Of a stretch of DNA of 64,000 nucleotides, positions 37,106-61,383 are shown one piece after another. Within the stretch, counting starts at the first letter, position 1. Each line of letters starts with the position of its first letter. Source of the stretch: Pocillopora damicornis (Eukaryota); assembly GCF_003704095.1 (NCBI RefSeq), contig NW_020847337.1, positions 1-64,000 on the forward strand. The letters are read 5' to 3'. A program made the translations under genes and the position numbers. The notes beneath the pieces are model-generated. The model made no database searches. It was not told where the DNA came from and saw only the letters and a list, made by a program, of their open reading frames with translations.

Positions 37106-40100
37106 TTAGCGATGTTCCTCCATGGAAGGTCCCTGTGGCATCCAATTCTGATCGCCGTACCAGGAACTTATATCACGCGAGTCCTTCCTGTAATATCCGC
37201 GCTCTATGAACCACGAATCTTCGCCCTTCTGACGCTCAGTTTCACGTCCTTCTGCACGCCGGGTATACCAAGGTACATTGTTCAACCTCTGAAAGGCACG
37301 ATCGTGCGCTCGATCGAAAAACCACGACGGATCTAATGGACCTTTGTAAGGCTTGCGCTTCGTATCACAAGGAAACCAGGACTCGTATTTGTCGGTGCTT
37401 CGTTGGAAATCTCGATCTTCTGCTCGGCGCTCATACCACGGCTCAGACCGCTGATGGGTGCGACCTTTGGCGCGCTCAAATAACCAATTAGGAGGTGGAA
37501 CGGACTCAACTGTCTCGGAATCAACGGAATTGCTTACTTTGTCTTCTTGCATGTCGGTATTTCGCCTATTCTTTCTTTTCTTCCCTTTGCTTGACTGAGT
37601 GCGATACACTTCGTCGGACAAAATCGGTCCTTGAGGGGATAACTTCTTCTGAGAATTTTTTGGCAGATTAAATCTCTTTTCCAACCACTCTTCAACTGAC
37701 AACCCAATATCTTTTGGTGGAATTGGGCCTTCGGGTGAAGATGTATCTAGGGAAACTTTCCTATGATTCGCCTCTTCGTACGAATAATCAGACCTTACTT
37801 GGCCATCTTCGCCAGAAATCGGACCTTGCGGTAACTTAACATCACGCTTCACAGTATTCCTATTCCTATCCTTCCACCACCTATTATCACGTGGCCGTTT
37901 CGGCTTTTCATCGGTTCGCTTCGGTTTCTTAACGGAACTCTTCGGACCTTGTCGTGACTTCTTCTTTCCAACATCGTAAGTCGATTCTTCAGAAACTATG
38001 ACGAAGGCCGTCTCTGTGGTTTTGTCCGAATCATCCGAAGTTTTTTCCGCGCGTTTTGGTTTAACATCTCCCTTAAGCAACATTCTCAACATAAGATCCA
38101 TGTCGAACGTAAAGTTTGTAAAACCAGCAAGCGCTTTATGCTCAGGTACCACTGCTATTTCTGACTTCTTAACTTCTTCTGGCATCTTGCGTTCTTTTTT
38201 ATTTCCCTTCTTCTCAGTCTTCGAAAATATTTCTTTTGCCTGGACTCTTCCATTTTCCCAATCGCATCTTTCGGTCGATTTCTCTCTGTCTTTAGTTCTC
38301 TTGGCCTTTGCCGAGTTCAAATCACGCATGTTAAGTTCTTTTTCTTTACTATCTCCTGCGTCGTGGTGTGTTCCAGAAGTCTTTCCCTCATTGCTTCCAG
38401 CATCAAAATATGGCTTTATCAAACTCCACGGCCAATTGATCGTTTTTCCTGGCTGTTCAAGAGCTTTCTTGGGAACATCACTTAACCACTTTCCAACATC
38501 TTCTAACTTTTTCCTAAAAGACACTTCGCCATCAGTCCACGGCCAATGACCCTGTCCTTGTTGGTGTTCAATGGCACTGTTATGAACATCGGACAACCAC
38601 TTCTGAATACCCTCCAACTGCTTTTTAAAGGACCCCTCGCCATCGCTTCTTTTTCTTTTTTCCTTGGTATTTTTTGGACGTGACGCTTCTTTTTTCACGT
38701 TATCAGACCGCATCTTCCATTCTCCTTTGGAAAACTTACTCTTTGCACCTTCTCCCTTTGCCCTCCGTTTTTCTTTATCATATTCAACTTGCTCAGCGAT
38801 AACAGAGTCATATTCTTTTTTTCGCTTCCTTTTCTTCTCATCCTTTTCCACTTTGATCCTCAGTTTTTCGTTGGCCCGTTTTCCCGTTCGTTTCCTTCCC
38901 TCCTCTTTGACCTTCCAAATCTTTTCCTTGCTTTCTAAATTTTTCCTCTTACGGGGCAGCTCTTTGCTCCGTAAGTTTTCTTCCTCCTTAGCCTCAATCT
39001 CAACTTCTTTGGGTACCCTTCCATCATTTTCCACGGTCTTTCTTAAATCTTGCCCATTAGTTTTGTCTACGGATTCATTTCTTAGTTCATCTTTATCTTT
39101 TAGTTTTTTACTCTCCACTGTACGCCGAGTGTTTTCTTCCTTTTTCCTCCGCTTTTCTTTGTCGAACTTGGGTTGCTCATTGACAACAGAATCATATTCT
39201 TTTTTATGCTGCCTATCAGCTTTTTCTCGTTTCTTCCTCGCCTTTTCGTTTTGTTTCTCCTTCTCCTGTCTTTTTATGTTACGGAGCTCGTTTAACCATT
39301 TTTTATACTCTTCTTTTGCCGCTTTCTTCAAGGACTTCAGTTCTTCCTTCTGTTGCCGCAGCTTGTTCTTCTCTTGAACAATTTTGTTCCTAAGGCGCTC
39401 CACTTCCTTCTTCTTCTCTGCACTTAAAGTTTTCTCTTTAAGCTTCAATTTGTTCCTCTCTTTGGTCAACAGTTCTTTTACTTTCTCCCTAAGTTCCACT
39501 TTCTTTCTCTTCAATTTCTGCTTTTCTCTTTTCAGTGCCACAAAAAAATTGTTCATCTCTGTTCTGTTCCTTTGATGACGTTCTTTTTCGGAAGAAATCC
39601 TCTTCTTCTCTCGTTTAAGTGCCTTCCAAGAGCGCCGCAGGTTTTTCTTCTCTTTCTCCAAACGGCGCCTTTCACGCCGCATCTCTGACACCAAGCGGTC
39701 AGCCTCCTCAGCGCGCAACTTAGCCTTCTTTTCTTTCTTTTTTAACTCGCGCCGGAGAATCCTCTGTTTGCGAATCTCTTGCCCACGTAACTGCGTCAAA
39801 TTTTTCAGCTGCTGCTTCTCTTTGCTGAGGAAGTGTCCATCTGATTGAACAGAAGTTCGGTTTCCCTTTCCTCTCTTCTTCAAGTATCCACTTCGACTGT
39901 GACGTTTTCTCTTGACATTAGAGGCCTCTTCGCTTTTTTTCATAACAGATGCTTCGTATGACTTTAAAAGATGAAAACCCGCAACATTTCCTTCCGATTT
40001 TCTTGATATCTTAGTATCTTCTTTGGTTGGTATGCTAGGCGCTTCCTTAGCATAGGATTCGTCGTCGTGAATCCAATTTCCATCACTTGTACTGTCTACG

Positions 40101-43100
40101 TACGAAATAACTTGGAGGTCTCTTTGCTGCGTTGTTACTGTAGGGGATAAGGTGTTCGCATTTCTTTCTAAATCTATGTTTGAATAATACTCCGGAGTTC
40201 CGTGGCCAAGAGGGAAAATTCCGTTAGGAAATAGAGGATTTTCAAAAGGAACACTTATTTTACGGAAATCTTGGCATATTTCTTCAGAGGGGCTATTGCG
40301 GCCTTTACTTTCTCCGTCTAAAGACTGCGACTTCTCAGTTTTCTTATATTCAAAATTTTTATCGGTTGTTATCGGATCTCGCACGGATTTTTTGGCTGTT
40401 CTATCCAAGAATTTCTCAATAACAGAAGCAGAGTATGACATTATAGAGCGGTCCTCAGGGAGAACACTTAACTCCTTCCTTTCACTGGGATAAGTGCACT
40501 TTCCAGTCTTTGACTGACAACTAGCATCCGTTTCTCCCTTCAAATGCGAATCTACTGTCCAACGTTTTCTAAAGTCCGTCCAGACGTTGTCCCACGTATG
40601 CTCTTTGGTTCTACCTTGAGACTTAATATCTAGTCCTTTGGAACCAATGGTGCCTACAGAGTCTTCGTGTCCCGGCGTTTCTGTCTCAATTGACAACTTT
40701 TGACTTGTATTTACGCTAACGGTTCTGAACCCATTCCTTTTCCAACGATGAAAATAATCCTTCCAGTACCTGCAATAAACGTAAGACAACTCCAGAATCA
40801 TTCAGTTACCCTTTGAAGTAGCTTCCTTGTTAGAGCAACACTGCGCAAATATAATTAACCCTTTACACCCTTACATCAGTATGCATATTCCCCATACTGT
40901 TTTCTACACAATTCCTAAGGTGCTGACAAGAAGAATTTGTTTATCAATCAAGAGAATATTTAGTTGGTGATCATTTCCTTTATTCTCATGACCTCACTGT
41001 GTCATGCAGGGGTTAAATAGTCGGGAGAAATTAGATGTTAGTCGCTCTCAGGGGTTAAAGAGTTAAGCTTGTTTTTACTTTGGGTTCTCGCTAGCTCCTT
41101 GAAATATGGGCTCTGATTGGCTGCCGTGTTCACTTTAGTTTTACGACACTCTCTCGAATTGCGCTCTATTGATACACCTTGTGAAAAGCCCAAAAGTCTG
41201 GAGAGCAAAGAAATTTACTTGATGACTTTCTCCTAAAAACCCTAGACAACACTGGACCTTTGTATATAAATGTACTCCTGTCTTGCTTAATACAACTCAT
41301 TACTAGTCGCTGGTCACAGAGCTGAATAAACACTGAGTAGTTGACATCGACACGCCTTCCCTATTCCTCCAAAGACAACTGAACACAGCTAAGCTGCACT
41401 TACCTATCTATCTTGATGCCTCCAGCCACAGCCTTTCTCAGCTTCGAGTTCTCGTTCATACGGCGCCACAGATCAGCAATTTGTTTTTCCTTTTCGTAGA
41501 GCCTCTCCGTTTGTTCGAGCTGTTCTTGTAAAGCTTTACTCCACTCACTGCTTCCTTTATTAGACTTCTCCTCCTCATACTTCAGCCGCCAGTACCATGA
41601 CATGACTTTGCTCATGCGCAAACGCTGTTTTACACTTTCGTGCATGCTCATGAGCTTGAAATGTTTCAGTTGGAGCTTTTCGTGCAGTGCTTTCGTGTCA
41701 AATAGATCATCTATTTCCTTTTCATTTTCTGACTCTTCATGAGTTTCAAGGCGTTCTTCTAATTTCCACATTTCCAGCTGATCTAGGAAATCAACTGATA
41801 CTTCATCCAAGGGCTCCATGGGATCGGAGTTTAGTGGAAGAGAGGCTGTCTTGGGCCCAGGTCTCTTGATGCTCCCAGACATCTCCAAGGCTCGGTTGCT
41901 GATAAAAACACTCAATCCTAAATAAAGTGGAGATTGGATATGAACCTTCATAAATTCATGAAAAAAATATGTTTCCTTCCATCAGCTAAATTTATTTTTT
42001 TTTTTTTTGGTTGTGGTAATATTTTCAAGCTGTCTCACAGGTACAACCAAAAGTGAAACATTTTAACTCATAACACCTAATCAAGCAGTCAGATAGTTTA
42101 TATACATACATATATTAAGTGTAAAACAGTGCTCAATACATAGGAGTGATCTCACTCTCTCTATCACAGCTCAGAATTTTTCAAAACATTATCCTAGCCA
42201 TGGGTGGAACCTTAAATCAAGAGACTCTTCATAAATTTGAAAACATTAGCCATTTTCCTAGTTTATATTTCATTAATGCCAAACTTGTTTCCCACCTGAA
42301 ATATTAAAGAGTCATCTTTCATTCTTTACAACCTACCATCATTACACACATTTTCCTTACTGTTCTCTATACATTTGATCAGGTGCTTACAAGGAGAATT
42401 TGTTTATTGATCAAGAGCTTCTTTGGCTGGTGATAACTTCCTTTATTTATGTGACCTTAATATGTGATTCAGGGGTGATATTAGACGAAGGAATAAGATG
42501 CTCCTAACTCTTAGGAGAAAAGGGTTTACCAAAAAATTTGTTTCCATTAAAAAAAGGCATCCTCCAAACAAAACCCTTGCAAAATTATCATTCTCTGAAA
42601 TACATTCATTACAGTAGTTAAAGAGCCATTATCATTATCATTATGCCTTACCATAGCCAATACTGAATCCCAGAGCAGTTGTTACACCCAGAACTACGAA
42701 CAAGGTTGGAATATCAACATGGAAGATATTGAAATTGTCACTTCCTTCTGTCGCAGTATGATCTTCCATTGGTTCATCATCCTCATCTCTTCCTTTGTCC
42801 TCATCAATGACTTCAGACACTTTTGTTAAATCAGAACTGCCATTTTCAACCTCATTGTCTTCATCCAAATCACTAGGATTAAATAAATCACTATCAAATG
42901 AGAAAATGCTGCTTGTAGACACAACCATTTCATCATGTGGTTCATTTTCATGACTTAGGTCTTCATAGTCTTCGTTTTCATCTTGTTCAGGGATTGTCTC
43001 AATGGCATTATCTTCGTCAGAACTGTTTGAATCATTACCAAAGGAGAAAGAACCACTCTCTGAGAGTAGAGGAAGTTCTTGCCAAACACAGGAATTACTG

Positions 43101-45394
43101 TCTGTTGATTTAGTGAGGGAATGTACACTTCCTGCATGATCAATGTCCAATTCAGAGGGCAACTGATCATCATTGCCTTCCACAGAAGAAACATCCTGGT
43201 CGACACAGTAGTGATTTGAAATGATCATAATACCATCATCTGCAGCACACTGGCAAGAGCTTTGTTGAACTGTTGAAAGCTCATCTCCTCTCTCAGATTC
43301 TTGACCAAGATGTAAATCATTCTGGGTTTTGGTTTTTGTTGTAAGATCAGAGTCCAGGTTCTTCTCTTCGACTGGTGGTTGATGACACTGAAATCCACTG
43401 AGGACCTCAAACTCTGCCTCTCCTTCACTGTCATCTGTAGCACTGGGTGACTCAAATGTGGAAACTAACCCATCAGCATTTGAAGGTGACTTGGAATAGG
43501 ATACAGAGTTCTTCCTTGGCTGAAAAAACCAAAATCTAGCTTTGAAATTTTGTTTCCTAGAATTTAATTTTTCTGCACACTAGTATAAGTTTCTTAATTC
43601 AATAAATAAATTAAAAAAGACATTAGACAATTTAATAAGATAATACATGGATGAATAACAAATTCAATTTTAAAAAAGAAAGAAATAGGCTGAATTAAGC
43701 TGTTTTTTATGGTTTCTTTCAAGTACTAAACATTTCAACAAAGGAAACCAAATAAAACTTTTAAAGCAAGGAAATATAAAAACAAAGAATGTTCTTCATT
43801 CACAGCTCCCTGAAATTCTAAGATTTAACCCTTTAACTCCCAGATCAAATTTATTATTCTCCTTCCTGTCTTATCATACAATTCTTATAAGGTTAGTTTG
43901 GAGAATTTAGTATTGGATCAACTAATTATACACAAATTGATATTTTTCTTTATTCTTATCACCTATCTAGTTGATATTGTATTGATATTGTAAGGAGAAA
44001 TTTTGTCTTGGTCACTCATGGGAGTTAAAGGGTTAAAAGAAACAAATTGCTTGGCCAGCAAAAATTTCTTCAAACAGAATCAGCACCAAATGCTATTGGA
44101 TCCATACAATTACTGTATTTATGACAGTAATTATTTTAAATATTGTTATTTATAACAGGTATTGCAGTAATTTTGGAATTTAAAGTAAACATTTATAAGA
44201 TCATTATTAAAAATAAAATCAAAAAACTTCTCTGCCTAAGTAGGCATGGCTAGTAACTTAAAATAATTTCAAGAACTTAGGTGGTGGCAATTGCTTAGCA
44301 TTAAAACACATTTCTCAGTTTTTGTTAATATTCTTGAAACAATCTCTGGTAGCTTGAAAATCAATGACTCCTTATAGCAATCAATTAAAGTAAACATTCT
44401 ATTTTTCTTTCTTCTTTCTCTGCACCTACAAATTTCGTGGCCAAATAAATCTGAAATTAAGATGATCATCTACTGATGAATTCAACATTAATTTTATTTA
44501 CATAAATTGAGTCAAAATTATAGAAATTCTACTTATCCAAAGTGAATTCTCAACATAAGAATCTGTATCACTAAAAATTTTCTAACTTAAGATCAAATCA
44601 GCCAAATAGTGAGAAGGTATCATTATGAAGCTGACAATTCCCTTGATATTTCTATTAAAATTAAAATCACTCCAATTTAATGAAGAACTTTGACCTTGAC
44701 AAAGAAATTATTTAACAAAAGTTACAGTTTGCTCGGCAACATAATTTTTTCGCCCAGTGCGGACTGCTGAATGTAACAACAGCAATGGGCTGAGAAAAGG
44801 AGGTAGAGAGTACAACAAATTTGTTATCATTTTCACGTTTAATAATAAACACCCGGCTTATGTAATCACAGGTGTAAAACGAACGTGGTTATCACGTGGT
44901 TATTGTTGACAGGCGAAAAGGTAAATACGACAAGTCCAAAATGCAAATTTATGGAGACTTGGGGACGTTTTGTAAACAAACAGCCAAAATAATAGTACGC
45001 TTGGCTAACTAGCCGTGTTGCTAATGCACGGGGGGGTTTTGTAACACCCAAAATTGTGCTGCGATTCACCTAAATTAATGCAGGTTTCGAACATCCTGAA
45101 TTTACACTCCAAATGGCGGAAAATCCCGGCGCCAAAATTTTGGGCGGTTGAAGCATTTGCATTTAGAATATACCCCACCTAGATTAGACGATTTCCACAA
45201 ATTTACCTATGTAGAAGGACTAGTTAAACTGAAGACATATTCATTTTTAAGCATGAGAGTGTGGAAAACCAGAACATTTCTTTCGCTGAAAACGACAAGA
45301 AACTTAAGATGCACTTTACCTCGATGTCAACTTTTCCATCCTTATCGACAAAAGTCCACTCGTTTTCAAAATCGTCTGACATTTTGGAAGCCAT
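37106..45394 (-). CDS. CCPG1: CCPG1/PBXIP1-like type II membrane protein (putative ER-phagy receptor), 4 exons, ~1706 aa
   Basis: Exons 45320-45394, 42652-43519, 41404-41917, 37106-40769 join in phase (5121 nt). N-terminus MASKMSDDFENEWTFVDKDGKVDIE resembles human CCPG1 ..SCGWTVISHEGSDIE (LIR + FIR1). Then an acidic disordered region, a single TM IPTLFVVLGVTTALGFSIGYGLSVFI, and coiled coils. Next to PIGBOS1/PIGB as in human. The gene model is solid; orthology is inferred. Confidence 0.65.
40855..41066. mobile_element. piggyBac-like MITE (TTAA target sites, CCCTT termini)
   Basis: ttaaccctttacaccc...ggggttaaagagttaa. Internal tgacaaggagaatttgttt...atcaagag is shared with copies at ~11418-11645, ~30130-30280, ~35150-35270, ~42330-42530 and ~51505-51710. 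Confidence 0.75.
43825..44036. mobile_element. piggyBac-like MITE, intact ends
   Basis: TTAA-CCCTTTAACTCCC ... GGGAGTTAAAGGG-TTAA: perfect 13-bp TIR plus TTAA duplication. Confidence 0.85.
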
Positions 45395-48119: not shown

Positions 48120-48386
48120 TTACTTTTCAGATGCTTTTTCTTCCCTTGCTTTTTCTTTTGCAGAATTCTCACTAGGACGATCTTTCTTTTGGGCCGACGT
48201 TGTGCTCTTTGCCTCAACTGCAGCTTGAATGGTGGCGCTATCCTCCTTCTTTGTACCATGTTCACTCACGTATCTCTCGAGCAACGGTTTGTAGATATAT
48301 ACACCACTTGTAACTCCGACTAAAGTCACTATAAATAACTGATGTAGAGGCATTCTTCCGATGCTTCTGATGAAGGAAAGCACCAT
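48120..48386 (-). CDS. PIGBOS1: PIGBOS1-like microprotein (88 aa; single N-terminal TM, charged tail)
   Basis: RMPLHQLFIVTLVGVTSGVYIYKPLLERY aligns with my recall of human PIGBOS1 [30 protein letters not shown]. Good start context aaaATGG. Divergent from PIGB, as in human. Confidence 0.88.
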   Translation of the reverse strand: MVLSFIRSIGRMPLHQLFIVTLVGVTSGVYIYKPLLERYVSEHGTKKEDSATIQAAVEAKSTTSAQKKDRPSENSAKEKAREEKASEK

Positions 48387-48505
48387 TTTAGGACCAGATC
48401 GTTACGGTCTATCAAATATCATCAGGCGTTACTCGTTAGCGATAGAGTTGAGACTAGGCTCCACACTATAGAGACGCCTTGTTGATTTTGATACCGAAGG
48501 TGAAA
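48387..48505. promoter_or_regulatory. Very compact bidirectional promoter/5'UTR region for PIGBOS1 and PIGB
   Basis: Only 119 bp between the divergent start codons; CpG-containing. Confidence 0.7.
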
Positions 48506-51500
48506 ATGGAGGTCGAAGAAATTGGAGGATCTGAGCTCAAAAGAAGAAAACAGGCTCAGATGGATAAGGAATCAGAGCAGCCATCTTCTATCTACCAGGG
48601 AGAAATCACCATGGTATCTCCAAATGTTATTTACCCGTCAAAAAATTGGCTGTTTCCGGCATTACTCTTCTTTAGGGTCATCAATGCTGTGGTGATCCAG
48701 ACATTTTTCGTCCCGGATGAATTTTGGCAAGGACCCGAAGTAGCCCATAGAATTGCATTTGGATATGGATATTTGACGTGGGAATGGAAAGAGGGTCTTA
48801 GAGGCTGGACTTATCCTTTGATCTTTGCAACAAGCTACAAGTGCTTAGCCCTATTTGGGATTGACACCGCCAAGTTCCTTGTTGTCATTCCCAGGGTGTT
48901 GCAGGCATGTTTTGCGTCGTGTGGCGACTTGTTTTTGTACAAATTAGCAGCAAAGAGGTTCGATGTACAAACTGCTCGATGGACACTCATCTGCTACTTG
49001 ATCTCGTGGTTTACACTTTACTGTGTGACTAGGACGCTGACAAATTCCCTAGAAACCGTGTTGACAACAGTAGCACTTTATTACTGGCCATGCGGCAGCA
49101 AAAAAGATGGCTTTAAACAAGTGTTCAAAGCTCTCTGTATTGCAGCGTTTTCTTGTACTATCAGACCAACAGCTGCAGTCATGTGGATTCCATTGTGTGC
49201 TTTTTATTTATTTTCATCACCAAACAAATTATCATTTATAGTTAACTGTATATTTCCCATTGGATGTCTGGCTATTTTATGGTCCCTCATTGTGAACAGT
49301 TGGTGTTATGGCACATGGATACTGGTGGAACTCAACTTCATCAAGTTTAATGTTATTAATGATATGGGAACATTTTATGGAAGTCATCCATGGCACTGGT
49401 AGGTAAAATTTGGACTCCTCTAGCTTGGAGCAGTTCTTTCCTTCAATAAAGGAAAGGGAGCTCTTTTTGTAGAATACAATATGTGAGTTGTTCTTCAAAA
49501 ATTATGCTTCTGCCTTGGCTAATACCTGCATATTTCACAGGTATTTCACCCAAGGATTTCCTGCTGTGATGTTTACACACTTGATTCCATTTGTTGGTGG
49601 TGTTTACAAATCTTCCCAAAGGCAGCAAACCTTGACTTTTCTAATCTTTTGGAGCATCGTTGTCTACAGGTTTGTTGCAAATGGAAAGAGAACCCTAAAT
49701 CTTTCTTTTTTAAATAAGAGCTAAACTTTTGTGATAATGTTTTGCCAATCTCTGAAAACCTGGCGATTAAATATTGGGGATGTTTGGTACAGACTGTTCT
49801 GAGTGAAAAGTGCACCATCCTGATTTTCTGCAACATTTGAATTATTAGTCAGTAGGATCAGTTGTATAGTTAAATACCAGATTATAATAAAAACTATTGT
49901 TTTCCCCTTTTTTCTAGTTTCTTGGGACACAAGGAGTTTAGGTTCATTTTTCCAGTGGTCCCCTTAGCCATGTGCTACTGTGGTTTCTATCTAAGCTTCC
50001 TTTCTGGGTATCCGTGTGAGAAAAAGGATCATGCATTTAGTCGTGGTTTTTCAAGGAAGATGAAATCTGGTTGGAAAGCAAAGATAATGGTACTATTTCT
50101 AGCGCTAACAAACATTCCATTGGCTATATACACTAGCACTGTTCACCAAAAGGGAACTACTGATGTCATGGAGTACATTCAAATTGAAAGCTCCAAACTG
50201 AGAAGTGCTAATGACATGTCTGTATTATTTCTGATGCCATGTCACTCGACACCATTTTATAGGTACAGTACTGTTTTTAATTTTGATGGTTGCTCCTGTG
50301 AAACTGTTTTCAGCTTTTTTTGTACATGTATTTGCTTTCCTTTTCTTTAGTATCTAACTACCCCATTCCAAGTTTTAGTTCAAGGAAGATGACTGAAAAA
50401 TAGGAAGTTCAAAAAATTTTTTTTGCATGCAAACAAGATAGGATCCATTAGGTTACAAACTTCATCATTTTTCTCATTTACCTCCTTGTAATTCACTCTT
50501 CTCCATGAATTGAAAGCCTAACACAAGAAACAGATTTGACCCATGACAGTAGTTACGAGTTACTGGGAATTACTGTTCAAACGAGGTTCAACATTATAAA
50601 AGTTTTCATGACTTCTAAAAGGAATTTGATCTTGTTGGAAAGGTCACATAAAGGCAAGATGTCGAATCTTGATGTTAAGGTAATTTACCTTGTAGGGGAC
50701 AACCTTGTCCTATTGTGAATTTACCTGCCTTCAGCAAATTATTAAATAAATAAACTTGCAAGAAAATACACAGTTTCTGAGCATCAGAATGCAAAGAGAA
50801 CATAGTAACACTCATAAGGAGTAGATTGAATCTAACTGAATCAGAAGTTTATGTCCTACTTCATCTTCGGTTGTGGATGAATATAAACCTAATAACTCAT
50901 TAAATAACAGGGTTTTTTTATAGTTTTGTACACAGAAACATAAGCATGAGGATATTAGAATGTCCCCCAAGTGATGAGGCAGGGTACATTGATGAAGCTG
51001 ATCAGTTTTACAGAAATCCCACATTGTGGCTATCAGAAAAGTATGGACTCTCTTCAGGTCATCAGGATCAGCTTCAATTTCCTACACACATTGTCCTGTA
51101 CAATGTGCTTTTACCCGTTAGTTGATCTTTCTTCACCATACTTGTATCATTCTCTTAGTCTTACAATTTTAAATGAAACAAGTCTAAATTTACCTTGGAT
51201 GAAAATCAGGTAAGAAAATGATTCTTACAGGTGAGCTGCAATTCACAATTTTAGTAGTTGCAGAAAAAAGCCTGGAAAGATTCAAGTTTTGATGAGATTC
51301 AAACCATGCCTCCCAGATTCTAGTTTAGCACTACTACCAACTGAGCTACAAGACTTCTTGTTGGGTGTCATCATCTCTTCTCCCCAACCCTTGTTGATTT
51401 GTAGTCTTGTAAAAATTCCCAATCATCAGCAAACAATTACTTTTTGTTCCACCATACAGTAAATTACCACCAACGGCAGTAATACTGCCAACCAAAAACT

Positions 51501-57091: not shown

Positions 57092-57365
57092 TTCGACGAC
57101 CTCTGACGACCCAAACCAACTTCTTCCCGGTAAATGTCACATTAGAAATATTTGTCTCGACTTTTAAGATTGGCGCGCTGCTTTCTGATTGGCTACTCGT
57201 TTAGACTGAGTTCCCAGACTGCTTTACCAATTTCAAGATGGCGGACGTTTACGTGGCCTTATGCGATTGCAAACATCTCCCGAAGATGCTCCCTTGGTAA
57301 CTAGTTGTATGGGGAAATTATGTGGAAAGTGATAGCCCGATAAAAATTCTTACACACTGGAAAAA
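57092..57365. promoter_or_regulatory. Putative bidirectional promoter between CKS and PARP16
   Basis: 274 bp between divergent ATGs. CCAAT boxes (ATTGG at ~57170 and ~57188, CCAAT at ~57227), E2F-like TTGGCGCG at ~57171, YY1 consensus CAAGATGGCGG at ~57234-57244. Confidence 0.72.
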
Positions 57366-60300
57366 ATGGAACCTGAAGAAGCGAAGGAACGTGTGCTACA
57401 AAGACTTGAATCTGACCTCACATCCGCTGACCTGCAGTGGAGTTTGTTTATTGCAGCTCTGGAAAGTTATAGACACGACAGCATATTAAGACCCTTTCCT
57501 TCTGCATACGTGGTTGGTGATGATAATAAGAATTTTCAAGGGCTGGTGAGTGTCGGTCACCTAAAAATCTGAGTTCAGCTGTACTTTACATTTTAGAGCT
57601 GGACATTCCGTTTTCCCCTAATTCCCTCTCCACTCCTCCTCTTCTCACTTCCCCTCTTCCCAAATCCATTTTTGCTTTCAGCACCTTTGACGACTGTATC
57701 GAATGATTTAAAAAAACTTTAAGGCCTCTTGAAAAAATTGTGGCCATCTTTTAACACATACACCCAAAAGCTCTTTGGCAAAGATGGCTACTCACTTGTT
57801 AATTGTGGTACTTCATTGTGATGGACAGCACCACTAAAATTGGTCTTCACAGGTTCAAGTTTGCAGTACAGTTCCTGCATTTGACAAGCTATTGACAGAA
57901 ACCAGTGAGAAGGTATATGCTCAAGAAACTTGGGATATCTTGGACTGGGCACTGGATAGAACCTTTGCACTGAGATCTGTTAAGAAATCTGTGGTATGTT
58001 TTTCAATAAAAATTTGCCTGATTATGGATCCTTCTGTCTTTTTTGCCTTATGATAATTGTAAAATTGCACTCCATGTACCTGAAAGAAGTCAGATTTTTA
58101 GACTAAAATATTACATAATTTTATTATAGATTAATAATATTTCAATAACAGCCTGGGCAATATTATGTTGGTGAAATGATCAACTTAGCTGTTACTTTTG
58201 CTGGTGCTACCAGGACTCTTATATTAAGCACAGTAGGTGAAGGAAATTGTCAAACCAGCACAGCAAATCTCTAACCTGTTGAATTTGCAGAATTTTAGGC
58301 AACTGTAGGCAGCTGCAAGAAGTACCACAACTGGTGAATGTTAGTGGTGTCTGCCTGAAAAAGTAAACCCTGTGTTACATAAGTTAGTATCTTATAATTT
58401 CCGTGACAATTATTTTTGCTATTATTAATGCCAACAGTTCTTGGAGATTGAGAAAAAAACTGGTCAAGCAAGTTACTGCTCCACCACACCTGACTTCATT
58501 TTCGAAGTTGTTTACAGGGAGACAAATACTCTCAGTGCAATGTTTGATGACATGTCACAGACTCGTGATGTTTGGTACGCTTACCATGGAAGTAGAGTGG
58601 ACAATTTTCATTCTATTTTGAATAATGGATTACATGCACATCTTAACAAAGTGAGTCTTGTCAGCTGTTTGCTTAGTTGAGTTACTTGGTAATCCCTCAA
58701 AGATTCTCACTGATCAAGTGGCTGGCTGGCTATGTGACTGACTGATTGGCTGACTGACTGACGGATTGACTCACTGGCTGATTGACTGGCTGACTCACTG
58801 ACTCACTGACTCACTGGCCATCTGGCTGACTCACTGGCTAACTGACTGACTGATGGACTGGCTGACTGGGTAACTCTCTGGCTAACTTACTGGCTTGCTG
58901 ACTGACTGGCTAACTCACTGGCTGGCTGACTGACTGACTGGCAGACTGGCTGACTGTCCAACTAACTGTAAGCCCACAAAGTAAGTTTGCCATAAACTGA
59001 AATCGCTCCTTTATTTTACACTTGCCCTTTCATTATTTTCCTCTGGATCTCCAAGGATGAATGGCTGATATGTATATGAACATTAATAAACATGTCGAAT
59101 AATTAGTGGACAGGAGATCCAGTGGCCTGATGGTCAGTGCACTGGACTCTGGATCAAGTGGTGTATGTTCAGGACCTGGTCAGGTCAACGTGTTGTGCTC
59201 TTGGACAAAACACTTTTCTCCCATAGTTCTTTCTTTTTCTCTCATAGCACCTCTCTCCACCCAGGGCCCACTTGTTTGAAAGAGGGTTAGCAACAATCCA
59301 GGATTAAAAGTTTACCTTGTCCTTGATTTATCTTGAAATAAAGCAGATACTAGGGCTTACCTCTTGAGGGGTTTTGCCATAAAGTTAGTGTAAGACAAAA
59401 CTGAAGGAGTAAATAAAAACTGTTCTCAAAGCTACAAAACAAAGTAAAAAATTGTTGGCAAACCCTCAGTTAGCTTAATTGTCCTTTGGACAACCCAACC
59501 AAGGAGTATATTTAATAGGTACTGGTGAATTGTCAGGGAAGCCTGATGAAATGCTTGGGGGGTAACTGTGCACGGACTGGCATTGGATCCAGAGGGGAGT
59601 AGTAATACTCCCAGTCGCTTCATGCTAACATGGAAACCGGGATAAGCTCTGGTTTGGCTGGGCAAATAGGCTTAGTACAGACTCAATCTAATCAGTTGAA
59701 AGACTTATGGTTTACTCTATTTATGTTTCATTTGTTAAACTGAGTAATTTTGTATTATAAACTGAGTTGATAACAGAAATTTGCCACCATAAAGAGTTTG
59801 AATGCTGATGTTTCAAGTGCTAACCCTTTGTCAGGGAATGACCATGACCAACATTCACCCTGATGTTTAAAATTTTAGCTTTGAAACTCAGCTCAGCTGA
59901 TAATACTAAATACCCACTTATACTCTCCCACCAATGCAACACCACAGTTTCTTCAGAAACTTACCCTCTATGATGTTTAATTAGATAAATTGAGTAGTAA
60001 ACCAAACCGCTTTTCTTCATTTTTTTAGACATCATTTTTTGGAGAAGGGACCTACCTGTCAAGTGATTTAACTGTTTGTATGAATTACAGTAGTTTTGGT
60101 TCAGGCTGGAAAAACAGCACAATTGGAGAAAAATTAAGTATCGTGGCTGTCTGTGAGATCCTGGACCATCCAGATGTGAAGTGTACTATCAAATCTAAAG
60201 CAAATGACAACAGACTAACTCGTTCTAGGGCCAGAGCAAGAAACAGTGAGGGAGGAGATGTCCCAGAGAGATATTATGTGGTTACAAACAACCAAGTTGT

Positions 60301-61383
60301 TAGGGTGAAGTATATGCTGGTGTATGCTGAGAAGAAAGCACCTACAAGGTATAGTAAATGTAGCATTACAATCATTAGTAGTAATAAAATTTATTCTTTC
60401 TCCTAGATAGTTGATACCTTCTCATTTGTGCATTCTTGTTACTTGGGTAGCTGAGAATTAAACAGGAAAGAACAATATTAGATGACCTTCTCGAACACTT
60501 TTTGATTGAGTGTCATAAATTCAAGAACAAAATTCCTATGACAACAGGCAATCAAAAGATAGGAAAAAACCTTAAAGAATCTCTGAGAACTTAAAGAAAA
60601 AACCACCAAACTCCTTAAAGCATGGTAAAATGTAGGCACCCAAGCCACGATTGGTTAGTTCTGCATCTGATTGGTTGAAATAGAGGTGCAAATTTTCTGG
60701 GCCAATCACAGGGCAAAGTGAAGCAAAACTAATGCAATCCCAGATGACTTTTGATACTCAATTGAAAATTGCTCTTATATCAATGTTCACTACTTTGGAA
60801 AATTTTGTTTGACGTTTCCTGATCAGTTACATTTTGTACCTGGTGTTTTTTAAACTGTATTGTCCTTCTTTCTGGGGTTTATCTGAACTACTAGTGAACC
60901 ACTTACCTCCAAGATCATATGGGTAATTCTCCCATCTTGTTACTTTTCATTTCCTTGAAAGTATGTTAAGAGAAGCTGATGCTATATCAGGATAGTACCC
61001 TTCCACTGATCATTTTGTCTCTTTTCATCATTTGTTTGCAGGATAGTTTATTAAATTTGAGAAGGGAAAGCATTAGTTCATCACTTCTGGGATTTAAATG
61101 ATGTACATAAACTTTGTTGTGTGACAGACAGATCCCTACATCTCTGTACATATTTTGTGGAAACTGTGGTTATGTATTTTCACATTTAAATTTCTATCCT
61201 AATTTTGATTTATGGTAACTTTCTTTTGTCTCCTGATCCAGGACTCAAGCTCGTAACTGGCTGATATTCCGATATCCGTTAGCCTCAATCATGGTTGCCT
61301 ATATCTTAGTTTTAATTTGTGTGGGTTTCTCCAAAACAAGACTTTTCCAAAAGTTTTATAGGAAATATTTCAAAGGAAGCTAA
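57366..61383 (+). CDS. PARP16: Mono-ADP-ribosyltransferase PARP16 (ARTD15), tail-anchored, 5 exons, ~331 aa
   Basis: Exons 57366-57545, 57853-57993, 58438-58650, 60029-60348, 61242-61383 (996 nt). ADLQWSLFIAALESYRHDSILRPFP; H-Y-Y triad in AYHGSRVDNFHSILNNGL, FGEGTYLSSDL and VPERYYVVTNNQVVRVKY; C-terminal TM LASIMVAYILVLICVGF. Confidence 0.95.
58718..58968. repeat. Degenerate tetranucleotide microsatellite (GACT/GGCT/CACT)n; shorter tract at ~24920-24990
   Basis: ggctggctggct...gactgactgact...cactggct arrays. Confidence 0.9.
60500..60775. mobile_element. TIR MITE family with CCAAT-rich interior (copies at ~12778-13055, ~26300-26470, ~41070-41170, ~62520-62690)
   Basis: Shared accaatcagatgcaaaactaaaaccaatc core (or its reverse complement); termini resemble agagcaatttt...ttgaaaattgctct. 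Confidence 0.6.

What the first reader, a model, noticed from the sequence alone, without database searches (positions are those of the whole stretch)
37106..45394. Giant CCPG1-like candidate ER-phagy receptor assembled from four exons
Seen: three separately listed ORFs plus a 75-nt first exon splice into one ~1706-aa protein. It has an N-terminal acidic LIR-type motif (DDFENE-WTFV) followed by G-KV-DIE, further candidate motifs EAE-FEVL and ADD-GIMII, one TM segment, then coiled coils. Known: mammalian CCPG1 is a type II ER protein with a WTVI LIR and FIP200-binding motifs (SDIEML, SDIVTL), encoded beside PIGB. Inference: a very divergent CCPG1/PBXIP1 pro-orthologue more than twice the human length, identifiable mainly by topology, short motifs and synteny.
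Basis: partly seen in the sequence, partly recalled or inferred. Interest (0 to 1): 0.8.

Follow-up and report, generated by a model that had tools for sequence, protein, structure and literature searches.

The report
Coral CCPG1-like membrane receptor gene
A real four-exon coral gene next to PIGB encodes a 1706-residue single-pass membrane protein that is probably the very divergent cnidarian counterpart of the ER-phagy receptor CCPG1, which the literature calls vertebrate-specific; sequence searches alone do not show the relationship.

Summary
Four minus-strand exons with GT-AG borders and matching phases give 1706 codons. The same structure is found in six other coral loci and in annotated proteins of Oculina and Nematostella.

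The product has an acidic, disordered N-terminal part with an invariant acidic-WTFV motif at residues 13-16. One hydrophobic segment follows, then a long helical, basic C-terminal part.

Evidence for a CCPG1/PBXIP1 pro-orthologue:
- The gene lies directly beside PIGBOS1/PIGB in corals, Nematostella and a further relative. PIGB and CCPG1 are also neighbours in human and hoazin.
- A phase-1 intron splits the glycine codon ending a GFxxxYG motif at the end of the membrane segment, in the same place in hoazin CCPG1.
- ESM Atlas neighbours of the N-terminal 520 residues are CCPG1/PBXIP1 clusters.

Evidence against:
- Precomputed Pfam CCPG1_N and CCPG1_C hits mark the bird protein but not the cnidarian ones.
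- A profile search of 1.84 billion proteins found only unnamed (apparently cnidarian) relatives and Nematostella.
- hhalign against bird CCPG1 exons is not significant.
- "DIE" and "DDGIMII" do not fit the published FIP200-binding consensus.

No RNA evidence could be obtained. My verdict is a probable divergent positional orthologue. ATG8 binding and ER-phagy function are inferred, not shown.

The parts
45320..45394 (-). Exon 1, 25 codons from the ATG; phase-0 GT donor at 45319-45318
   Evidence: A 25-codon (corals) or 26-codon (Nematostella) first exon ending in the same place is conserved.
45344..45376 (-). Candidate LIR: acidic run plus W13-T-F-V16 (DDFENEWTFVD)
   Evidence: W13, T14, F15 and V16 are invariant in 7 corals. 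Oculina has NDWTFV, Nematostella SDWAFI, L008 NDWTFV and L007 EDWGIV. The motif fits [DE]-W-x-x-[IV].
45320..45328 (-). D23-I24-E25, at the same residue numbers as human FIR1 D23-I24-E25
   Evidence: Variable among cnidarians, and the following residues (P-R) break the FIR consensus.
42652..43519 (-). Exon 2: acidic disordered N-terminal region (net charge -58) with conserved short islands, and most of the membrane segment
43400..43420 (-). EAEFEVL, a conserved motif that fits the LIR/FIR consensus (F62..L65)
   Evidence: EPEFEIL in Nematostella and EAEFEVL in L008.
43220..43240 (-). DDGIMII island, FIR2-like in position
   Evidence: IMIISNH is invariant in corals and the first D is E in one locus. 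DDGIMIIS is also present in Nematostella and L008. It lacks the acidic residue before the first hydrophobic position that the consensus of PMC7946963 requires.
42653..42712 (-). Membrane segment, exon 2 part (IPTLFVVLGVTTALGFSIGY), ending in the GFxxxY(G) motif
   Evidence: Bird CCPG1 has ...AISMGFGHFY(G) in register.
41918..42651 (-). Intron 2, phase 1, inside the Gly codon that closes the membrane segment
   Evidence: The same position and phase are seen in 6 other corals, Nematostella and hoazin CCPG1.
41404..41917 (-). Exon 3: end of the membrane segment, a basic flank (IKRPGPK), then a conserved helical juxtamembrane domain (VMSWYWRLKYEEEK ... ADLWRR)
   Evidence: alignments; AlphaFold2 helices 37-70 and 74-166, pLDDT 80-95; family search.
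37106..40769 (-). Exon 4 (1220 codons plus stop): a variable linker, a K/R/E-rich helical region, conserved N-x-T sequons and a basic W-rich C-terminus
38669..39871 (-). Strongly basic K/R/E-rich stretch (exon 4 residues about 300-700; K+R 32-39 per 100 residues), presumed coiled coil
   Evidence: No coiled-coil program was run, so the helical character is inferred from composition and from the consensus.
38108..38116 (-). N885-F-T sequon, present in 13 of 13 family members aligned
   Evidence: Consistent with luminal exposure, but not proof of it.
37169..37486 (-). Five copies of a roughly 14-residue module W-x3-R-[AG]-x2-R-x3-R (for example PWYERRAEDRDFQR); copy number varies among species
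   Evidence: AlphaFold2 gives short helices here at low confidence. None is present in hoazin CCPG1.
48123..48386 (-). PIGBOS1 microprotein gene, immediately upstream on the same strand
   Evidence: Pfam PF23670, E 4.1e-14, 52.9 bits against a cut-off of 27.
48458..50347 (+). First two coding exons of PIGB (GPI mannosyltransferase 3), head to head with PIGBOS1
   Evidence: Glyco_transf_22, E 6.6e-72 and 2.6e-18. Nearly all named relatives are GPI mannosyltransferase 3/PIGB.

Best explanation
This is one real gene. It encodes a single-pass membrane protein found across hexacorallian cnidarians (stony corals and the sea anemone Nematostella), with further unnamed relatives. It is most likely the very divergent positional orthologue, or pro-orthologue, of vertebrate CCPG1/PBXIP1.

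Proposed working (inferred, none of it tested here):
- The membrane segment anchors the protein in the ER.
- The roughly 295-residue acidic, disordered N-terminal part faces the cytosol.
- That part presents a conserved N-terminal LIR (E-W-T-F-V) and further acidic-hydrophobic motifs (EFEVL, D[FY]xDL, DDGIMII) to ATG8-family proteins and possibly to FIP200.
- The long helical and basic C-terminal part (about 1390 residues) lies in the ER lumen and would hold luminal content or ER subdomains.
- Receptor-rich ER would thereby be delivered to autophagosomes.

Shown here: the gene structure, its conservation, the motif conservation, the PIGB linkage and the shared intron.
Inferred: orthology, topology, ATG8/FIP200 binding and the ER-phagy role.
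For: Gene model:
- Splice sites and phases were read.
- The same four exons are found in six coral loci.
- The exons are colinear with single annotated proteins in Oculina and Nematostella.
- The gene is single copy in this genome.

LIR:
- W-T-F-V is invariant in corals.
- [DE]-W-x-[FI]-[VI] is kept in Nematostella, L008 and the distant L007 clade, which shares only 28% identity in the juxtamembrane domain.

Synteny:
- The order PIGB(-)/PIGBOS1(+)/this gene(+) is seen in the window and in L001, L004, L005 and L008.
- L003 and Nematostella L011 show PIGB beside the gene, but no PIGBOS1 was called there.
- PIGB and CCPG1 are adjacent in hoazin and in human.

Shared intron:
- A phase-1 intron sits in the Gly codon after GF-x3-Y at the end of the membrane segment: coral tat g|gtaagg ... 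ag|ga, hoazin CCPG1 tat g|gtgagt ... ag|gt.
- The same intron is present in Nematostella.
- hhalign puts LGF and MGF in register, four residues before the exon end in both.

ESM Atlas:
- For Oculina residues 1-520 the nearest clusters are PBIP1 and CCPG1 (scores 0.85-0.87, 178-180 of 256 features shared, 9 of the ten best in one family).

Topology:
- The more positive C-terminal flank also occurs in bona fide CCPG1. In hoazin the N flank is 0 and the C flank +4, so the charge asymmetry does not argue against an N-terminus in the cytosol.
- An N-x-T sequon in the C-terminal part is present in 13 of 13 members.

Machinery and rivals:
- ATG8 genes are present in the genome.
- No other locus in the genome resembles bird CCPG1's luminal exon (best E 0.2).
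Against: - No significant sequence similarity to vertebrate CCPG1/PBXIP1 was found. The exon 3 profile against 1.84 billion representatives gave 13 hits: 12 family members, all unnamed except Nematostella, and one spurious repeat protein.
- hhalign of the cnidarian alignments against hoazin CCPG1 exons gave E 0.27, 0.016, 0.14 and 0.31, with probabilities below 3%.
- Precomputed Pfam hits list CCPG1_N and CCPG1_C for the hoazin product. They list nothing for the Oculina or Nematostella full-length proteins or for the coral exon ORFs.
- The C-terminal third has no Atlas neighbour and no confident fold. Nothing like CCPG1_C is seen.
- The FIR1-position 'DIE' is followed by P-R and varies between species.
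- 'DDGIMII' has Gly where the FIR consensus needs an acidic or phosphorylatable residue.
- The gene sits on the PIGBOS1 side of PIGB, whereas vertebrate CCPG1 is tail-to-tail with PIGB. In the L007 organism the relative is about 430 kb from PIGB.
- The N-terminal part also has an invariant N-S-S sequon and four invariant cysteines, so sequons do not settle the topology.
- There is no RNA evidence.
- A FIP200/ATG11 Claw domain was not detected exon-wise in this incomplete assembly (inconclusive).
Confidence: 0.6

Rival explanations
1. It is a cnidarian-specific membrane-anchored coiled-coil protein unrelated to CCPG1. On this reading the N-terminal W-x-x-V motif, the architecture and the PIGB neighbourhood are convergence or coincidence. 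It could still be an autophagy receptor by analogy.
For: - HMMER and hhalign find no link to vertebrate CCPG1.
- There are no precomputed CCPG1_N/CCPG1_C hits on the cnidarian proteins, against hits on the bird protein.
- The C-terminal W-x3-R-A modules and the juxtamembrane VMSWYWR domain have no vertebrate counterpart.
- The gene's orientation relative to PIGB differs from vertebrates.
- Atlas scores under 0.9 are only leads.
Against: - Several independent coincidences would be needed at once: immediate PIGB/PIGBOS1 adjacency in corals, L008 and Nematostella, as in vertebrates; an identical intron position and phase in a GFxxxYG motif at the end of the membrane segment (my rough estimate is about 1% by chance); an acidic W-x-x-[IV] motif at residues 13-16 against 14-17 in human; and Atlas neighbours that are exactly the family proposed beforehand.
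- No alternative CCPG1-like locus was found in the genome.
Confidence: 0.25
2. The topology is the opposite of CCPG1. The acidic N-terminal part would be luminal or extracellular and the giant basic coiled coil cytosolic. The protein would then be an ER-shaping or ribosome- or cytoskeleton-binding anchor in the manner of p180/RRBP1 or kinectin, and the 'LIR' would be irrelevant.
For: - The flank before the membrane segment is net -1 to -5 and the flank after it +1 to +3.
- The N-terminal part is net -58 to -95 and the C-terminal part +61 to +123. The positive-inside rule then favours a cytosolic C-terminus.
- There is an invariant N-S-S sequon and four invariant cysteines in the N-terminal part.
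- Very basic K/R-rich helices are typical of cytosolic nucleic-acid or microtubule binders. This last point rests on my own knowledge.
Against: - Bona fide CCPG1, whose N-terminus is reported to be cytosolic (PMC5791736), shows the same flank asymmetry in hoazin (0 against +4).
- There is no signal peptide, and 295-466 residues would have to be translocated after synthesis.
- The pattern of conservation in the N-terminal part, short acidic-aromatic islands in a variable acidic background, is that of cytosolic short linear motifs.
- The N-[FL]-T sequon in the C-terminal part is present in all 13 members.
Confidence: 0.12
3. The model is a gene-prediction artefact, with exons of two or more genes joined by eye.
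For: No transcript data could be obtained. None of the fetched Logan- or ENA-derived proteins spans an exon junction.
Against: - Exon order, splice phases and GT-AG sites are conserved in seven coral genomes.
- The Oculina and Nematostella annotations join the same parts.
- The membrane segment itself is split by intron 2, so exons 2 and 3 must be joined to make it.
Confidence: 0.03

Closest known systems
Vertebrate CCPG1 (cell cycle progression 1), ER-phagy receptor
   Same: - Acidic N-terminal region with a W-x-x-[IV] LIR at residues 13-16 (human W14/I17), followed by D-I-E at residues 23-25 in both.
- A DD..I..[IL]-type island about 100-120 residues in (human SDDSDIVTLE at 101-110).
- A single membrane segment ending GFxxxYG, with a phase-1 intron in the final Gly codon.
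- A basic flank after the membrane segment.
- A long helical, lysine-rich C-terminal part.
- A position as neighbour of PIGB.
   Different: - 1706 aa against 757 aa.
- No CCPG1_N or CCPG1_C Pfam hit and no significant profile similarity.
- FIR1 and FIR2 equivalents do not satisfy the published FIR consensus.
- It has its own conserved juxtamembrane domain and C-terminal W-x3-R-A modules, which are absent from bird CCPG1.
- It lies on the PIGBOS1 side of PIGB in divergent orientation, not tail-to-tail.
PBXIP1/HPIP, the vertebrate paralogue of CCPG1
   Same: PBXIP1 clusters are the top Atlas neighbours of the N-terminal 520 residues. If the orthology holds, the cnidarian gene would be co-orthologous to CCPG1 and PBXIP1. 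That inference rests on my own knowledge that the two are paralogues.
   Different: No PBXIP1 sequence could be examined here, so no sequence-level test was made.
Nematostella vectensis LOC5517779 (XP_001637837.1 / A7RSA3) and Oculina patagonica XP_078377094.1, both unnamed
   Same: These are true orthologues. They share the motifs, the membrane segment, the juxtamembrane domain, the C-terminal modules and the PIGB neighbourhood, and Nematostella shares intron positions 1 and 2.
   Different: Nematostella has a longer N-terminal part (466 aa) with several extra GW[NDK]EL motifs and no third intron. Oculina has an internal duplication in the fourth exon.
p180/RRBP1, kinectin and CLIMP-63 type ER coiled-coil anchors
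   Same: Single-pass ER proteins with very long charged coiled coils (my own knowledge).
   Different: They lack a long acidic N-terminal region rich in LIR-type motifs. No sequence relation was seen in any search.

Membership tests
CCPG1/PBXIP1 family | Match to the Pfam models CCPG1_N (PF27636) and CCPG1_C (PF27631) | tested here: not met
   The local Pfam copy lacks both models. The collection's precomputed hits include them: the hoazin CCPG1 product carries both. Oculina P0004, Nematostella P0072 and the coral exon ORFs carry none. The precomputation covers only part of the collection, so this is not airtight.
CCPG1/PBXIP1 family | Detectable sequence or profile similarity to vertebrate members | tested here: not met
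   - hmmsearch of the exon 3 profile over 1.84 billion proteins gave no vertebrate hit.
- hhalign against hoazin CCPG1 exons gave E 0.016-0.31.
- The weak local matches (ADLWRR with SDLWEKL; WLSDVHKK region with FSDSV/HHKEK) are colinear but not significant.
CCPG1/PBXIP1 family | Canonical LIR near the N-terminus (human W14-x-x-I17, acidic context) | tested here: met
   E/D-W13-T-F-V16 is invariant in corals, and [DE]-W-x-[FI]-[VI] is kept in all cnidarian relatives examined. This is at motif level only; binding is untested.
CCPG1/PBXIP1 family | FIP200-interacting FIR motifs (psi-Theta-x-x-Gamma with preceding acidic residues; PMC7946963) | tested here: inconclusive
   - D23-I24-E25-P-R fails at Gamma.
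- DDGIMII fails at psi.
- EAEFEVL and D[FY]xDL fit and are conserved.
- The L007 clade has EDDVEIIQI and SDDVVIV, which fit.
CCPG1/PBXIP1 family | Single membrane segment after the acidic N-terminal domain, with N-terminus cytosolic and C-terminus luminal | tested here: inconclusive
   There is one hydrophobic segment. Orientation cannot be computed reliably. The flank charges resemble those of hoazin CCPG1, and there are sequons on both sides.
CCPG1/PBXIP1 family | Shared gene structure around the membrane segment | tested here: met
   A phase-1 intron lies in the Gly codon after GFxxxY in the window, six other corals, Nematostella and hoazin CCPG1.
CCPG1/PBXIP1 family | Genomic neighbourhood of PIGB/PIGBOS1 | tested here: met
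   Adjacent in the window and in L001, L003, L004, L005, L008 and Nematostella L011. Vertebrate adjacency is shown. The side and orientation differ.
CCPG1/PBXIP1 family | Direct binding to ATG8 proteins and FIP200; induction by ER stress; ER-phagy activity | not testable with these tools
   ATG8 genes exist in the genome. No ERSE-type element lies upstream of exon 1. No expression data could be obtained.

The most novel reading that the evidence does not exclude
The CCPG1/PBXIP1 lineage is not a vertebrate invention. It would date back at least to the cnidarian-bilaterian ancestor as a PIGB-linked, single-pass ER protein. Its N-terminal LIR, the end of its membrane segment (GFxxxYG) and an intron there have been kept, while the luminal part has been almost wholly rebuilt. 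An ER-phagy receptor with a large luminal domain would then be an ancestral eumetazoan feature, open to study in Nematostella (LOC5517779).
Probability: 0.5. Interest if true: 0.7.

Novelty: new variant of a known kind. Interest (0 to 1): 0.6.

Why it matters
Papers and reviews state that CCPG1 is vertebrate-specific (PMC5791736, PMC10092646, PMC9126229).

A cnidarian counterpart would move the origin of this receptor type back by several hundred million years. It would also show which parts are the conserved core: the N-terminal LIR, the membrane anchor and the long luminal rod. The parts that look replaceable are the FIR motifs, the cargo-interacting regions and the C-terminal domain.

It would give a genetically tractable non-bilaterian model, Nematostella. 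It would also offer a candidate for ER quality control under stress in reef corals.

The case also shows orthology that is visible through synteny and intron position while profile HMMs are blind to it.

Tried and rejected
- Local Pfam scan of the four exons: nothing. Later I found the local copy lacks CCPG1_N and CCPG1_C.
- Word-index protein search with exon 4: only coral ORFs plus the Oculina protein.
- Word-index search with the divergent P0078 clade: only unnamed relatives.
- PDB sequence search with the exon 1 and exon 2 profiles: nothing relevant.
- ESM Atlas on the C-terminal 514 residues: no usable hit.
- AlphaFold2 of the C-terminal 361 residues: mean pLDDT 49 and no fold, so no fold search was run.
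- ERSE-type UPR element upstream of exon 1: none.
- ATG11/FIP200 Claw Pfam model in the genome: no hit; the control genomes did not ring either, so this is uninformative.
- A look-up of a fish PIGB isoform, meant to reach a compact ccpg1 locus, found nothing on record.
- The hoazin locus ends, and has an assembly gap, before the CCPG1 N-terminal exons. The gap was left as it is, and the vertebrate position of intron 1 could not be checked.
- One literature query was badly framed and gave nothing.
All searches were exon by exon or used database proteins.
- Primate PIGB hits were not followed.
- Resemblances I recalled from memory between human CCPG1/PBXIP1 and the coral protein were used only as leads. 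Those that could be checked against the hoazin exons turned out not significant.

Full report
**Observation**

On the minus strand the sequence shows four exons:
- An ATG at 45394 opens 25 codons ending GKVDIE, followed by GTAAAG.
- After TTTTTCAG at 43520 an open frame runs from 43519 to 42652 and ends G|GTAAGG.
- After TTTAG, 41917..41404 ends AG|GTAAGT.
- After TTGCAG, 40769 runs to the TAA at 37108-37106.

The phases (0, 1, 2) fit and the sum is 1706 residues. The three long ORFs are those.

The joined protein was not sent to any tool. All work was done exon by exon or on database proteins.

**Is it one gene?**

The exon 4 search found coral ORFs and one annotated protein, Oculina patagonica XP_078377094.1 (1813 aa). 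That protein starts MASRALDDFENDWTFVDKDGKVDVE and carries all four parts.

Six coral loci were fetched around the exon 4 homologues. They contain all four exons in order, with GT-AG sites and the same phases.

The profile search added Nematostella XP_001637837.1 (A7RSA3, 1548 aa). Window exons 2, 3 and 4 match it colinearly. Its gene has the same first intron (after ...SSIE, phase 0) and second intron (phase 1), but no third.

The membrane segment is itself split by intron 2. The gene is single copy in this 234-Mb assembly.

Transcript evidence is missing.

**Anatomy**

- *Exon 1.* W13, T14, F15 and V16 are invariant, and D/E precede them.
- *Exon 2.* This is an acidic region (69 D+E against 11 K+R) with islands of invariance in a variable background:
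  - PRKNSVSYSK
  - DDSEGEAEFEVLSGF.CH
  - C.CAADDGIMIISNH.C
  - GW.ELP.LSESG
  - SNSS..DN.IEPIPE
  - FSFDSDLF
  - the membrane segment PTLFV.LG.TTALGFSIGY
- *Published FIR/LIR core.* Against psi-Theta-x-x-Gamma (PMC7946963), three motifs fit and are conserved in position: E-W13..V16, E-F62..L65 and D-[FY]210..L213. D23-I24-E25-P-R and DDGIMII do not fit.
- *Hydrophobic segments.* Only one exists.
- *Exon 3.* It is 72-82% identical among corals. AlphaFold2 models it as a disordered 36 residues, then helices 37-70 and 74-166 with pLDDT 80-95.
- *Exon 4.* It has a variable first third, then a stretch with 32-39 K+R per 100 residues. Sequons are present in 9, 12 and 13 of 13 aligned members. The C-terminus has P-[QE]-G-P motifs and five W-x3-R-[AG]-x2-R modules. 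AlphaFold2 sees only short helices there at low confidence.

**Family range**

hmmsearch with the exon 3 profile over 1.84 billion representatives gave 13 hits. They comprise corals, Nematostella, several unnamed relatives in which exons 3 and 4 are fused, one spurious repeat protein, and a divergent clade (P0077-79).

In that clade the upstream exon (L007:6650-7162) encodes a short acidic N-terminal part with EEDWGIV, EDDVEIIQI and SDDVVIV, and the membrane segment LTTVLGFVIGHG. No vertebrate protein reached E 0.001.

**Tests of the CCPG1 idea**

*Literature*
- Human LIR is W14/I17, FIR1 is S22-D23-I24-E25, and the N-terminal domain is residues 1-230 and cytosolic. The protein is called "vertebrate-specific" (PMC5791736).
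- The FIR2 peptide is SDDSDIVTLEPPK and the LIR is CGWTVI.

*ESM Atlas*
- For residues 1-520 of the Oculina protein the nearest clusters are PBIP1 and CCPG1, scoring 0.85-0.87 with 178-180 of 256 features shared.
- The tool rates scores under 0.9 as leads. Even so, the neighbours are exactly the family proposed beforehand.
- The C-terminal part gave nothing.

*Synteny*
- Upstream of exon 1 on the same strand lies PIGBOS1 (PF23670, E 4e-14). It is head to head with PIGB, identified by Glyco_transf_22 and by relatives named GPI mannosyltransferase 3 almost throughout.
- The same trio is found in L001, L004, L005 and L008.
- L003 and Nematostella L011 have PIGB beside the gene, but no PIGBOS1 was called there.
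- The human order is RAB27A, PIGBOS1, PIGB, CCPG1.
- In hoazin, PIGB is followed tail-to-tail by a 786-aa gene carrying CCPG1_N and CCPG1_C.
- So the neighbourhood is shared, but the cnidarian gene is on the other side of the PIGB/PIGBOS1 pair.
- In the L007 organism PIGB and PARP16 lie about 430 kb away on the same contig.

*Gene structure*
- The hoazin locus gave bird CCPG1 exons by reference.
- Its membrane-segment exon ends ...AISMGFGHFY + g|gtgagt, and the next exon starts ag|gt ACA (G-T-I-Q-I-Q-K-R).
- The coral exon ends ...TALGFSIGY + g|gtaagg, and the next starts ag|ga TTG.
- Both therefore have a phase-1 intron in the Gly codon that closes a GFxxxYG motif at the far end of the membrane segment.
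- hhalign aligns LGF with MGF in that register.
- Given three coral introns in 1706 codons, I estimate an exact coincidence of position and phase at roughly 1% by chance. This is my own estimate.

*Profile comparison*
- hhalign of the cnidarian alignments against the 478-residue hoazin luminal exon gave only weak local matches, at E 0.27, 0.016 and 0.14.

*Pfam*
- The precomputed hits, made with a newer Pfam than the local copy, mark the hoazin product. They do not mark the Oculina or Nematostella proteins or the coral exon ORFs.

*A better orthologue elsewhere?*
- The hoazin luminal exon, including CCPG1_C, finds nothing in this genome (best E 0.2).

**Topology**

The flanks and the overall charge would favour a cytosolic C-terminus by the positive-inside rule. 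However, hoazin CCPG1 has the same asymmetry (0 before, +4 after), and CCPG1's N-terminus is reported to be cytosolic. Sequons are conserved on both sides. Topology therefore remains an inference.

**Conclusion**

The gene and its conserved features are real.

Membership of the CCPG1 family as defined by sequence models is not met. Four independent lines point the other way:
- PIGB linkage across stony corals and the sea anemone Nematostella;
- the shared intron in the shared motif at the end of the membrane segment;
- the N-terminal LIR at the same place;
- the Atlas neighbours.

Together they make a very divergent pro-orthologue the best reading, at about 0.6. Function as an ATG8-binding ER receptor is a reasonable inference from the motif conservation, but it is untested.

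The rivals are a lineage-specific look-alike (about 0.25), the opposite topology with a cytosolic basic rod (about 0.12), and a model artefact (about 0.03).

Noticed in passing
window 48123-48386 (-) and 48458-50347 (+): A PIGBOS1 microprotein ORF (88 aa, PF23670, E 4e-14) lies head to head with PIGB, as in vertebrates. The pair is also seen in other coral loci and in L008.
   Followed up: yes
window about 57336-60403 (+): PARP16/ARTD15 exons (ARTD15_N E 9.5e-18; PARP E 4e-11 and 1e-9) lie downstream of PIGB. PIGB-PARP16 adjacency recurs in L009, from another organism.
   Followed up: partly
window about 10573-18946 (-): Exons of an exocyst Sec10/EXOC5 gene (Sec10_N at 18614-18946, Sec10_HB at 16079-16303 and 10573-10917). 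A bZIP-domain ORF also lies somewhere among the open frames scanned outside the candidate gene; it was not localised.
   Followed up: partly
window 1-2000: The window holds 2584 N, and GC is 0.11 in the first 2 kb, which suggests an assembly gap or masked stretch. It was left untouched.
   Followed up: no
window exon 4, about 38500-39200 (-): There is an internal duplication in this species. Two copies each of an EYDSV..EQ..DKEKRR block and of an SF[KR]KQLE..WLSDV...WPW block are present, where several other corals have one.
   Followed up: no
P0073 / L008:9830-13207: The C-terminal module is amplified to five near-identical tandem copies (NWEPWYERRAKGRDEWRA) in one relative. Copy number of these modules varies from 2 to 5 or more among species.
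   Followed up: no
L007:13795-22982: Next to the divergent family member lie Use1 exons and two large genes combining ankyrin repeats, a protein kinase domain and Ribonuc_2-5A (IRE1/RNase L-like).
   Followed up: no
L007:19-591: An ORF made of repeated GVLAGVVEDFSEGFVEG units lies at the contig end. It is probably a simple repeat, not a gene.
   Followed up: no
L010:27355-27432: An assembly gap (a run of N) lies inside hoazin CCPG1 just upstream of the membrane-segment exon. It was not filled. The N-terminal exons lie beyond the locus end.
   Followed up: no
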